From: Octopus bimaculoides
Lineage: Eukaryota
DNA length: 64,000 nt
Reading direction: 5' to 3'
Assembly (NCBI RefSeq): GCF_001194135.2
Contig: NC_068990.1
Coordinates: 93,298,746-93,362,745, forward strand
Shown here piece by piece: positions 3,201-4,760 of the stretch (position 1 is its first letter; the number at the start of each line of letters is the position of its first letter). The notes beneath the pieces were generated by a model that was given only the letters and a program-made list of their open reading frames with translations, had not been told where the DNA came from and ran no database searches. The translations under genes and the position numbers were made by a program.

Positions 3201-4760
3201 TAATCTACGCAGCTGTTTGTTTATATTGCATTTACACATAGAAATATGACTTTCGGCAGGTAAGAACAGCTTACAACTCTTGTCCTTCTTCTTTCGTTTG
3301 ATTGTTTCAAACAGTTGTTATACAGAATAAAATCTGGAAAAAGCAAATCTAAAGAAAGGCTTTGTTGCTTAAAGCATGTTTTCTTGTTTTCTTTTAATTT
3401 ATGCTTCAGTTTCTCATTCCTCTGTTTCTGTTTCTTTTTAGTGAGATCAGCAACGATTTGTCGCTTGTAAAAGCATATCGTATTTTGCGAGTGGAGTGAG
3501 TTTCCATCACTAGCTGGTGATTAACACACACTGAGGATGGGTGACCACCCAGAAACTCGAGTCCATGTGTCTCACATAAGGCTAGAAATGGGAGCAATGA
3601 CCTCCCCTTGCAAATACTAATTGGACACAGAATGTGTGTCGTTAGCCAGGTAGAGGAGATGTCTTCCTGGGGCTATAAACGTCAGTAGCACTGTCTCGTA
3701 TAGGATGCTACACTTGGTTGACAATTATATGTTACAAAATATATTACATTTTGTTCCATCTTCAAAGCATGCCTTACGTATCTTTGAACACATGTTAGAT
3801 GTAGCCATTACTGTGTTGTGTCTAAGAGATGTTTCAAACTTCAACAAATATTACTTATAACTAAATTCATAGAGTAAAGATTGTTTGCCAATATAACATG
3901 GTAGTCTTGGTTTAGGATGAATGTTGCTGTAATTTAGCCCCAGCGGAAATTGTCTCCAGCTGGCTGTACGACACGATCTGTGTCCTTATGTTTTCAAACG
4001 AGGGAATTTAGCACCCCCACTCAGCTCAAAACAAATTATTCTGTGCTGATGAAGGGAAATAACCCGGAAATTACGATACAAAGATATTGTTTTCAGCTGA
4101 GTGGGGGTGCTAGATTACCTTGTTCGAAAATATAAGGACACAGATCGTGTCATATAGCCATCAGGAGACAATGTCTCCTGGGACTAAATTACAGTAACAT
4201 TCGTCCTAAACTAGGACTGCCATGTTATGTTGGCAAACAATCTTTACTCCAAAGTACTGTTGCTGGATGTCTCTTGTTGTCAGATTTAAAAATAGTAATT
4301 TTCTAAAACTGTATTGTTTTCTAAGACCTATCATATCCTTAAGCAAGTGTTAGCTATAACCATTGTTGTATCCTAAGACCCACCATTTCTCTTGTCTTAT
4401 GTTTTTCTTTCCAGGAAAGTTATGTATTATGTTTCTGTGAAAAACAATCATGAACTATTTTTTAATCAACTCCGAGATGGTGATCTGAGTGGAAGTCAGC
4501 TGGCCAATGGTAAGTTGCACCGTTTCTGTGCATATTGACTGTCCGGTCCATTTACACCTGTGTCTTTCACAGAGGTGTAAATGTAATGTACACAATCTTT
4601 AGCACAGGTGTACATGTAAGGTATGCTGTCTTTGAGTGACAATGTGTGGGATATGACACTCAACTCGTTCATAAAACACACGTCTTCAATGGTTTTTAAC
4701 ACACAAACATATGCACATAGACACATACACACACATACACCCCCCACACACACACACACG

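What the first reader, a model, noticed from the sequence alone, without database searches (positions are those of the whole stretch)
3872..4249. Hammerhead ribozyme sitting at the tip of a 163-bp hairpin, sense to the PDE8 pre-mRNA
Seen: arms 3872-4034 and 4087-4249 are ~88% complementary. The 52-nt spacer folds as a type I hammerhead: stem I TCTGTG/CAAAGA, CUGAUGA, stem II GGG/CCC with a 6-nt loop, GAAA, stem III AU-UACG-AU, AUA site at 4078. Stem I runs almost directly into the long arms. There is no TSD, and the element ends 165 nt before the acceptor of exon 4415. Established: Penelope-like elements and retrozymes carry minimal type I hammerheads, and an extra nucleotide after A9 is tolerated in some hammerheads. 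Inference: this is a non-autonomous RNA-based foldback element rather than a class II MITE. I do not know of a described family in which a MITE-like hairpin is capped by a ribozyme. If active, it would cut the host pre-mRNA co-transcriptionally. The extra G before GAAA may impair catalysis.
Basis: partly seen in the sequence, partly recalled or inferred. Interest (0 to 1): 0.8.

Follow-up and report, generated by a model that had tools for sequence, protein, structure and literature searches.

The report
Hammerhead-like motif capping an intronic hairpin
A 378-base hairpin in an intron of an octopus-like PDE8 gene carries at its tip a sequence with the layout of a type I hammerhead ribozyme; it is most likely a decayed relic of a ribozyme-bearing retroelement, and I could not show that it is active or that it defines a new kind of element.

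Summary
The hairpin is real. Arms 3872-4034 and 4087-4249 are 163 nt, gapless and 88% complementary, with a 52-nt spacer.

It has two defects: an A.G mismatch where the conserved G10.1-C11.1 pair belongs, and a G.A mismatch in helix I. Chance is unlikely: 0.005-0.035 such motifs are expected per 62 kb, and about 5e-6 per strand at a random apex of this hairpin.

Three results argue against an active ribozyme:
- No Rfam hammerhead model scores it, even at E<=10 on 49 nt.
- The hammerhead fold is predicted 8 kcal/mol worse than a competing fold.
- No second copy, tandem partner or homologue could be retrieved, because no cephalopod DNA is reachable with these tools.

Best reading (0.4): a relic about 19 million years old of a hammerhead-bearing retroelement (Penelope-like pLTR or non-LTR retrozyme lineage), inserted head-to-head so that helix I extends into the arms. 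The ribozyme is probably crippled.

Rivals are a dedicated hairpin-retrozyme family (0.25), a class II MITE with a chance motif (0.2) and a local inverted duplication (0.07).

The parts
3872..4034 (+). Left arm of the hairpin. On the + strand it reads as the reverse complement of the sequence that lies 3' of the hammerhead-like motif.
   Evidence: 163 nt, 88%, gapless; 143 Watson-Crick, 11 G:U, 3 A:C, 6 other
4035..4086 (+). 52-nt spacer at the apex. GC content is 35%.
4040..4084 (+). Type I hammerhead-like motif. It is the only descriptor hit in the window on either strand.
   Evidence: chance estimates; no Rfam support
4040..4045 (+). Helix I, 5' strand (UCUGUG). It pairs with 4084-4079, with one G4043.A4081 mismatch.
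4046..4052 (+). Core CUGAUGA (C3-A9).
4053..4066 (+). Helix II region: A4053.G4066 (a mismatch at 10.1-11.1, or two 1-nt insertions), GGG 4054-4056 paired with CCC 4063-4065, and loop 2 AAAUAA 4057-4062.
   Evidence: pairing probability of the three G-C pairs is 0.96-0.99
4067..4070 (+). Core GAAA (G12 A13 A14 A15.1).
4070..4077 (+). Helix III: A4070-U4077 and U4071-A4076, with loop UACG, which is not palindromic.
   Evidence: predicted pairing probability about 0
4078..4079 (+). Putative cleavage site, between A17 (4078) and C1.1 (4079). It lies 337 nt upstream of the putative acceptor.
   Evidence: inferred from hammerhead numbering; distance
4079..4084 (+). Helix I, 3' strand (CAAAGA).
4087..4249 (+). 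Right arm of the hairpin, the sequence downstream of the motif in sense orientation.
3870..3871 (.). Left flank TA. Together with CA at 4250-4251 it may be a decayed TA target-site duplication, or it may mean nothing.
   Evidence: about 9% expected by chance for 3 or more of 4 bases (my estimate from base composition)
4250..4251 (.). Right flank CA.
4416..4509 (+). Putative PDE8 exon: a polypyrimidine tract and AG before it, GTAAGT after it, and one open frame. It is not verified by any protein match.
   Evidence: sequence; no homologue found

Best explanation
This is a single, old, degenerate copy of sequence from a hammerhead-bearing retroelement of the Penelope-like-element (PLE) pLTR / metazoan non-LTR retrozyme lineage.

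The roughly 170 nt that follow the ribozyme's cleavage site are present twice, head-to-head. One copy (4035-4249) still includes the hammerhead. The inverted copy (3872-4034) stops just short of it. Helix I of the type I hammerhead therefore runs on into a 163-bp duplex, and the ribozyme sits at the tip.

The most likely origin is at integration, by the route documented for PLEs: target DNA is primed on both strands, and an inverted 5'-truncated copy is laid down next to the direct one.

The two arms have since diverged by 12%, about 19 million years on the published octopus TE clock. Over that time the 45-nt ribozyme would have collected about 3 substitutions, which matches its two visible defects.

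Today the ribozyme is probably inactive or very slow as a lone monomer. In the PDE8 pre-mRNA the element acts mainly as a long intronic hairpin. Any cleavage would have to compete with splicing, because the acceptor lies only 337 nt downstream.

Shown: the hairpin, the motif and its non-random nature, its orientation, its defects, and the absence of tandem or other copies in the window.

Inferred: the retroelement ancestry, the head-to-head integration mechanism, the age, and the loss of activity.
For: - Hairpin geometry is exact and gapless, as expected for a one-step inverted duplication rather than an RNA-selected rod.
- The motif is the only hit in 64 kb. A canonical-geometry descriptor expects 0.005 per 62 kb, and a random apex of this hairpin gives about 5e-6 per strand.
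- Its layout is the one PMC4209133 describes for canonical metazoan type I hammerheads: helix I 6 bp, helix II 4 positions, helix III 2 bp with a 4-nt loop. [quoted passage not shown] - PLE insertions 'often' have an inverted 5'-truncated copy that forms inverted repeats, with hammerheads in the pLTRs (PMC8557442).
- A purified PLE protein cleaves and extends both target strands, prefers AT-rich sites with an ATT motif, and starts reverse transcription about 90 nt downstream of the hammerhead cut site (PMC11167929). Here the distance is 171 nt, and an ATT lies 5 nt upstream of the insertion in an AT-rich flank.
- The JC distance between arms is 0.134, or 0.067 per arm. That gives about 19 My and about 3 expected changes in 45 nt (clock from PMC13282606).
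- Hammerhead_1 loci are reported in a cephalopod genome: 235 in the giant squid (PMC6962438).
Against: - No sequence link to any PLE or retrozyme could be made. No cephalopod DNA or repeat library is reachable.
- No reverse-transcriptase or GIY-YIG reading frame lies nearby.
- Both truncation points would have to bracket the hammerhead within a few bases. That is a coincidence unless helix I itself guided the joining.
- The 11:3 excess of G:U over A:C between the arms is not expected from neutral decay of a single DNA insertion (p = 0.057 two-sided).
- Octopus PLEs expanded mainly around JC 0.2, older than this element (PMC13282606).
- Rfam's hammerhead models do not score the motif at all.
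Confidence: 0.4

Rival explanations
1. Dedicated hairpin retrozyme-like family. This would be a non-autonomous, RNA-propagated element whose functional form is the + strand RNA: a rod about 170 bp long with a type I hammerhead as its cap. The copy here would be one decayed member.
For: - The hammerhead-like motif fills the apex exactly, and helix I is continuous with the arms apart from a 5/2-nt internal loop.
- Mismatches between the arms are biased towards G:U on the same strand that carries the hammerhead: 11 against 3. The + strand MFE is -261.5 kcal/mol against -232.2 for the - strand.
- That bias is what selection on an RNA hairpin, or A-to-I editing before retro-copying, would give. The base 5' of the G is U six times, A twice, C three times and G never.
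- The surrounding sequence shows no G+T skew that would explain the bias.
- Size (378 nt), low GC (41%) and heavy self-pairing with a free hammerhead match the description of metazoan retrozyme RNAs (PMC7229834).
Against: - There is one copy only in 64 kb, while SINE-like families have 8-10 copies there.
- There is no tandem arrangement, which defines non-LTR retrozymes.
- Gapless 88% complementarity looks like a DNA or cDNA duplication, not an evolved RNA rod.
- The wobble bias rests on 14 sites (p about 0.03-0.06).
- One hammerhead in a monomer cannot release a unit-length RNA.
- The motif is defective, and Rfam does not recognise it.
Confidence: 0.25
2. Class II MITE or foldback element with long terminal inverted repeats, whose loop resembles a hammerhead by chance.
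For: - It is a blunt-ended, gapless, whole-length inverted repeat of MITE size with no coding capacity.
- The flanks TA|...|CA are one transition away from a TA duplication.
- Two more hairpin MITE-like elements lie in the same window, and one has TA on both flanks.
- The per-arm distance of 0.067 is near the TIR-transposon wave at JC 0.09 in octopus (PMC13282606).
- No Rfam hammerhead hit, and the hammerhead fold is thermodynamically disfavoured.
- If a genome holds about 1e5 such hairpins, on the order of one chance apex match genome-wide is expected under the relaxed descriptor.
Against: - The chance of a hammerhead-shaped apex on a given hairpin is about 5e-6 per strand under the relaxed descriptor. 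It should be lower for the canonical geometry, which is about 7-fold rarer window-wide.
- The TA/CA flank match is expected about 9% of the time by chance.
- The G:U bias sits on the hammerhead strand.
- The termini (GAGT...) do not resemble typical Tc1/mariner or hAT ends, and no 8-bp duplication is present (my reading).
Confidence: 0.2
3. Local, one-off inverted duplication of intron sequence, from replication template switching or fold-back repair. It would not be a mobile element, and the motif would be either a chance match or an older solitary hammerhead remnant that became the turn-around point.
For: - No other copy exists in the window, and the flanks are unique.
- There is no clear target-site duplication.
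- The arms are gapless.
Against: - This reading still needs to explain the hammerhead-shaped apex.
- Blunt, symmetric ends and 41% GC against 37% background look like foreign sequence.
Confidence: 0.07
4. Domesticated intronic ribozyme that regulates PDE8 splicing, by analogy with the conserved intronic hammerheads of amniotes.
For: It is in sense orientation, in an intron, 337 nt upstream of a putative acceptor. Conserved intronic type I hammerheads exist in amniotes (PMC6155905).
Against: - The number of defects matches neutral decay, so there is no sign of purifying selection.
- Helices II and III are weak, and a competing fold is preferred.
- The exon itself is unverified.
- No conservation data are available.
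Confidence: 0.03

Closest known systems
Hammerheads in the pseudo-LTRs of Penelope-like elements, and PLE insertions with an adjacent inverted 5'-truncated copy (PMC4209133, PMC8557442, PMC11167929)
   Same: - It is a type I motif with open helix I, and it has a nucleotide between A9 and 10.1 in one register.
- Helix III is weak, and low activity is expected for a single motif.
- The inverted-repeat architecture can arise at integration.
- The target site is AT-rich, and there is no fixed target-site duplication.
- The hammerhead lies one to two hundred nt from the 3' end of the insertion.
   Different: - No reverse-transcriptase or GIY-YIG reading frame or pLTR context is present.
- Helix II is short (3-4 positions, against 6-8 bp in the minimal PLE hammerheads), and a helix III is present.
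- There is an extra G or A.G mismatch next to G12.
- The hammerhead sits exactly at the centre of the inverted repeat rather than inside each arm.
- No sequence similarity to a PLE could be tested.
Metazoan non-LTR retrozymes (PMC7229834; bioRxiv 10.64898/2026.07.22.740005)
   Same: - It has a type I hammerhead layout with a 2-bp helix III and a tetraloop.
- The unit size of 378 nt falls within 170-400 nt, and GC is low.
- The RNA is highly self-paired with the hammerhead left free.
- Solitary monomers of retrozymes are known, and many lie in introns.
   Different: - It is not in tandem, and it is a single copy here.
- The unit is opened opposite the ribozyme rather than at the cleavage site.
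- The arms are an almost exact inverted duplicate, whereas retrozymes are described only as 'highly self-paired'.
- The loop 1-loop 2 tertiary contacts cannot be assessed.
Conserved intronic type I hammerheads of amniotes, such as the RECK and CTCL introns (Rfam HH9 and HH10; PMC6155905)
   Same: It is in an intron, in sense to the host gene, and is a type I motif thought to derive from retroelements.
   Different: The amniote motifs are strongly conserved and match Rfam models. This one has core-adjacent defects and no Rfam match, and its conservation is unknown.
Discontinuous hammerhead in rodent Clec2 3'UTRs (PMC6155905)
   Same: It is a hammerhead in which one helix is closed by a very long stretch (150-1500 nt).
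   Different: The Clec2 motif is type III with a long insert in helix I. This one is type I, and helix I is itself a 170-bp duplex.
Hairpin or foldback MITEs (class II)
   Same: It is a whole-length inverted repeat under 400 bp, non-coding and intronic. Similar hairpins lie nearby in the window.
   Different: No clear target-site duplication is present, the apex is hammerhead-shaped, and the mismatch pattern is strand-biased.

Membership tests
Hammerhead ribozyme, type I | Conserved core C3-U4-G5-A6-N7-G8-A9 and G12-A13-A14, in type I order | tested here: met
   CUGAUGA is at 4046-4052 and GAAA at 4067-4070, in the order helix I - core - helix II - core - helix III - site - helix I.
Hammerhead ribozyme, type I | Helix II abuts the core directly with a G10.1-C11.1 pair | tested here: not met
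   Either A4053.G4066 occupies 10.1-11.1, or G-C is present but flanked by an extra A and an extra G. The strict descriptor without insertions gives 0 hits. The extra base after A9 is known in PLE and viroid hammerheads (PMC4209133). I know of no precedent for the extra G before G12.
Hammerhead ribozyme, type I | A15.1-U16.1 pair, and H17 (not G) at the cleavage site | tested here: met
   A4070-U4077 form the pair, and A4078 is followed by C4079.
Hammerhead ribozyme, type I | Match to curated covariance models (Rfam Hammerhead_1, HH9, HH10, _3, _II) | tested here: not met
   There is no hit at gathering threshold on the window. There is none at E<=10 on 521, 76 or 49 nt.
Hammerhead ribozyme, type I | The three-helix fold is accessible | tested here: inconclusive
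   The hammerhead secondary structure scores -0.1 kcal/mol against -8.5 for a competitor that pairs CUGAU with AUUACG. Helix III pairing probability is about 0, while helix II is about 0.97. Tertiary contacts are not modelled, and natural minimal hammerheads also look unstable as monomers.
Hammerhead ribozyme, type I | Covariation in the helices across homologues | not testable with these tools
   No homologous copy could be retrieved.
Hammerhead ribozyme, type I | Site-specific self-cleavage | not testable with these tools
   This needs in vitro transcription or mapping of RNA ends.
Metazoan non-LTR retrozyme | Short tandem repeats (150-450 bp), each with a type I hammerhead | tested here: not met
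   It is a single copy with no tandem repeat at the locus. Solitary monomers are nevertheless reported for retrozyme families (bioRxiv 10.64898/2026.07.22.740005).
Metazoan non-LTR retrozyme | Unit of 170-400 nt, low GC, highly self-paired RNA with the hammerhead free | tested here: met
   The element is 378 nt with 41% GC, and its MFE is -261.5 kcal/mol. The description comes from PMC7229834.
Metazoan non-LTR retrozyme | Expressed as linear and circular RNA | not testable with these tools
   No transcriptome data are available here.
Penelope-like element insertion (5'-truncated, with inverted copy) | Inverted 5'-truncated copy adjacent to a direct copy that carries the pLTR hammerhead | tested here: inconclusive
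   The architecture fits: 3872-4034 is inverted and 4035-4249 is direct with the motif. Identity of the arms with a PLE 3' region could not be tested.
Penelope-like element insertion (5'-truncated, with inverted copy) | Reverse-transcriptase plus GIY-YIG reading frame, or similarity to one | tested here: not met
   No long non-repetitive reading frame lies next to the element. That is expected for a severely truncated fragment, so it only shows the copy is not autonomous.
Class II MITE | Terminal inverted repeats, small size, no coding capacity | tested here: met
Class II MITE | Target-site duplication of fixed length | tested here: inconclusive
   The flanks are TA on the left and CA on the right. 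No 3-, 4- or 8-bp duplication was found (and my reading).
Class II MITE | Many dispersed copies with the same termini | not testable with these tools
   None exist in the 64-kb window.

The most novel reading that the evidence does not exclude
Cephalopods harbour a so far undescribed family of retrozyme-like, RNA-propagated hairpin elements. In these, a type I hammerhead caps a rod of about 170 bp, so helix I is the whole element. The + strand RNA is the selected, and possibly ADAR-edited, form. This locus would be one decayed member sitting in sense in a neuronal gene's intron.
Probability: 0.2. Interest if true: 0.65.

Novelty: new variant of a known kind. Interest (0 to 1): 0.4.

Why it matters
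Hammerheads in animal genomes are now understood as parts of Penelope-like elements and of retrozymes that spread through small circular RNAs. If this hairpin-capped form is a family, it would be a third architecture for such elements. It would also give a clean case for asking how ribozyme retroelements are integrated: by priming on both strands, by snap-back synthesis, or by joining guided by helix I.

It would also place a long, perfect double-stranded RNA and a potential self-cleaver in the pre-mRNA of a signalling gene, in an animal known for heavy RNA editing (my background knowledge, not tested here).

If, as I think more likely, it is a single decayed by-product of a Penelope-like insertion, it is an ordinary relic. 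It would be useful mainly as an example of how such insertions create long intronic hairpins.

Tried and rejected
**Routes to other copies or orthologues, all dead ends**
- The 61-aa ORF across the apex found nothing in the 5.8-billion-protein search.
- The ORF holding the putative exon 4416-4509 found nothing.
- Concatenated PDE8 catalytic exons confirmed PDE8, but the best hits were 54% identical (fish and Logan contigs). No cephalopod protein was returned, so the look-up of encoding contigs could not reach an orthologous intron.
- A metagenome scan for CTGATGAAGGGN{4,8}CCCGGAAA gave 51 hits. None has hammerhead context, and many share one conserved flanking sequence that looks like a bacterial gene.
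- The 20-mer at the arm terminus gave 0 hits in the prokaryote genome collection. It gave one hit in IMG/VR that does not extend beyond 20 nt.
- The supplements of the PLE paper and the O. vulgaris repeat paper hold no sequence library.
- The flanks are unique in the window, so there is no paralogous empty site.

**Interpretations rejected**
- C/D-box snoRNA: Rfam gives 7-10-bit hits to the UGAUGA box only, and there is no box D (CUGA) before the 3' strand.
- miRNA precursor: the MIR6224 and MIR319 hits are far below gathering threshold and merely reflect a long hairpin, on both strands.
- tRNA-derived SINE: no tRNA was found.
- Assembly or library palindrome artefact: the arms differ at 20 of 163 positions.
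- hAT-type ends: TAGAG/TGGAG can be read at the termini, but no 8-bp duplication is present.
- A second hammerhead at the apex of the hairpin at 5752-5994: it has CTGATGAAG but no matching GAAA and helix set.
- PLE-like ORF starting in the core: the AUG inside CUGAUGA opens only 28 codons, and the stop is shared by both arms.
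Full report
**1. What is there**

The inverted repeat is exactly as reported. Arms 3872-4034 and 4087-4249 are 163 nt and 88% complementary with no gaps, and 52 nt lie between them. 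It is the longest inverted repeat in the window. As RNA the 378 nt fold into one hairpin of -261.5 kcal/mol, with z = -30 against dinucleotide shuffles.

Of the 163 arm positions, 143 are Watson-Crick, 11 are G:U on the + strand, 3 are A:C (these would be G:U on the - strand) and 6 are other mismatches. Accordingly the + strand folds better than the - strand: -261.5 against -232.2 kcal/mol.

**2. The apex**

The spacer reads AUUAU-UCUGUG-CUGAUGA-A-GGG-AAAUAA-CCC-G-GAAA-U-UACG-A-U-A|CAAAGA-UA.
- Helix I is 4040-4045 with 4084-4079. It has five pairs and one G4043.A4081 mismatch.
- The core CUGAUGA is 4046-4052.
- Helix II is GGG/CCC with a 6-nt loop.
- GAAA is 4067-4070.
- Helix III is A4070-U4077 and U4071-A4076, closed by UACG.
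- A17 is 4078.

The two 'extra' bases, A4053 and G4066, face each other. The motif can therefore be read as a hammerhead of standard metazoan dimensions with an A.G mismatch where the conserved G10.1-C11.1 pair should be. Those dimensions are helix I of 6 bp, helix II of 4 positions, loop 2 of 6 nt, and helix III of 2 bp with a 4-nt loop.

These are the dimensions PMC4209133 gives for canonical metazoan type I hammerheads. They are also those of the Schistosoma-derived N79 ribozyme printed in PMC12550524. Read the other way, the base between A9 and 10.1 together with a G10.1-C11.1 pair are the features PMC4209133 lists as arguing against a random origin of hammerheads in Penelope-like elements (PLEs). 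In that register only the G before G12 is unprecedented, to my knowledge.

**3. Is it chance?**

I wrote a descriptor search and ran it on both strands.
- With no insertions allowed, the window has 0 hits. With one base allowed on each side of helix II, it has one hit, namely this motif.
- Markov-model sequences of the same length and composition give 0.02-0.035 hits per 62 kb.
- A canonical-geometry descriptor also finds only 4040-4084, and expects 0.005 per 62 kb.
- Keeping this hairpin and drawing random 52-nt spacers gives a hit with probability about 5e-6 per strand.
- The window holds three hairpin elements, so chance placement at an apex in this window is of order 3e-5.

Chance would become competitive only if tens of thousands of windows had been screened. 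I put the motif being hammerhead-derived at roughly 0.8.

**4. Evidence against an active, canonical ribozyme**

- No Rfam hammerhead family (Hammerhead_1, _3, _II, HH9, HH10) matches. This holds at gathering threshold on the whole window and at E<=10 on 521, 76 or 49 nt. What the scans do return is generic hairpin matches to miRNA models and box-C-like UGAUGA matches.
- The hammerhead secondary structure scores -0.1 kcal/mol. The favoured apex fold (-8.5) pairs CUGAU 4046-4050 with AUUACG 4070-4075. It simply prolongs the hairpin up to the GGG/CCC tip.
- Helix III and the inner helix I pairs have about zero probability in the ensemble.
- Helix III is two A-U pairs, and its loop is not palindromic. 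No second motif exists nearby to form the dimeric ribozymes described for weak-helix-III hammerheads (PMC4209133, PMC7229834).
- Minimal PLE hammerheads showed no detectable cleavage as single motifs (PMC4209133), and one PLE hammerhead needed its protein (PMC11167929).

I therefore expect this copy to be inactive or slow. That is an inference, not a measurement.

**5. Context**

PDE catalytic-domain exons lie on the + strand near 20.2, 22.1, 28.8, 41.1 and 46.4 kb. Concatenated, they hit PDE8 proteins at E about 1e-83. The gene assignment and the sense orientation therefore hold.

The putative exon at 4416-4509 has good splice signals and one open frame, but no protein match. The element ends 166 nt, and the putative cleavage site lies 337 nt, before that exon.

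An engineered fast hammerhead knocks down a transcript from a 17.5-kb intron, but did not do so from a roughly 500-bp intron (PMC12550524). A slow ribozyme this close to the acceptor should therefore matter little.

**6. Age and decay**

The JC distance between the arms is 0.134, or 0.067 per arm. On the octopus TE clock (JC 0.09 = 25 My; PMC13282606) that is about 19 My. It also predicts about 3 substitutions in a 45-nt neutral segment. The two structural defects of the motif are what neutral decay would give, and one base change each would restore pairing. There is no sign of constraint, and no proof of its absence.

**7. What kind of element**

The window has no other copy, no tandem array, no tRNA-like part and unique flanks. 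The flanks read TA|element|CA, so a TA duplication with one transition cannot be excluded. No longer duplication exists.

Three published facts bear on the architecture.
- PLE insertions often carry an inverted 5'-truncated copy next to the direct one, giving inverted repeats, and their pLTRs carry hammerheads (PMC8557442, PMC4209133).
- A purified PLE protein cuts and extends both strands of an AT-rich target and starts reverse transcription about 90 nt past the hammerhead cut site (PMC11167929).
- Metazoan retrozyme RNAs are 170-400 nt, low in GC and highly self-paired, with the hammerhead free (PMC7229834). Solitary monomers occur, many in introns (bioRxiv 10.64898/2026.07.22.740005).

The simplest reading that uses only documented processes is a head-to-head pair of severely truncated 3' ends of such an element. 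The longer copy retains the hammerhead. The complementary helix I strands may have served as the microhomology that joined the two cDNAs; that last step is my speculation.

**8. What does not fit that reading**

- The 11:3 excess of G:U over A:C has p = 0.057 two-sided. It lies on the same strand as the hammerhead, while the surrounding sequence has no G+T skew.
- The base 5' of the wobble G is U six times, A twice, C three times and never G. That pattern resembles the neighbour preference of ADAR, which I cite from memory.

Both would be expected if the hairpin had been propagated or selected as + strand RNA. The sample is 14 sites, so I treat it as a hint.

**9. Verdict**

The interpretation 'RNA-based rather than class II' is favoured but not shown. 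'Undescribed kind' is weakened by the PLE and retrozyme literature. Activity is doubtful.

Everything decisive needs cephalopod genomes or wet work, neither of which was reachable.

Noticed in passing
window 5752-5994: A second hairpin, MITE-like element. Its arms are 81 nt and 98% complementary, so it is young, and its spacer is 75 nt. The spacer begins AATGC-CTGATGAAG, the same nine bases as the core region of the finding. It has no GAAA and helix set that would make a hammerhead. It abuts an N gap.
   Followed up: partly
window 49340-49567: A third hairpin element. Its arms are over 100 nt (59 nt of them at 95%, extended by eye), with a 28-nt loop and TA on both flanks. It sits in a TA/TG microsatellite and looks like a TA-duplicating MITE.
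   Followed up: partly
window 32038-32443, 54563-54955, 51158-51589, 52653-53008, 28043-28290, 37465-37680, 61378-61601 and others: A SINE-like repeat of about 400 bp is present in about 10 copies at 73-89% identity within the 64 kb.
   Followed up: no
window 2344-2696, 58716-59102, 46808-47153, 30376-30743: A second repeat family of about 350 bp at 80-87% identity. Its spurious ORFs read ...[11 protein letters not shown]...[11 protein letters not shown]....
   Followed up: no
window 20098-20382, 22060-22197, 28767-28868, 40977-41216, about 46350-46520 (+ strand): These are exons of a PDE8-type phosphodiesterase catalytic domain (motifs [43 protein letters not shown]). No cephalopod PDE8 protein was returned by the protein search; the best identity was 54%.
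   Followed up: partly
window 6031-6319, 13874-14201, 27667-27968, 38008-38111, 42065-42485, 56966-57419, 63855-63995 and five short ones: Twelve runs of N (assembly gaps), at least several of them bordered by TA/CA-type microsatellites. This is a short-read scaffold, so repeats near gaps may be collapsed.
   Followed up: no
window 4250-4254 and 4079-4083: The right flank of the element starts CAAAG, the same five bases that follow the putative cleavage site. This is probably chance, and it is not explained.
   Followed up: no
window 4540-4633: Just after the putative exon's donor site lies a small cluster of short inverted and tandem repeats (33-nt period, 2.2 copies; 24-nt arms at 79%).
   Followed up: no
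L052 3724-3743 (IMGVR_UViG_3300033075_001822): An exact 20-nt match to the arm terminus in a viral contig. The similarity does not extend, so it is a chance match.
   Followed up: yes
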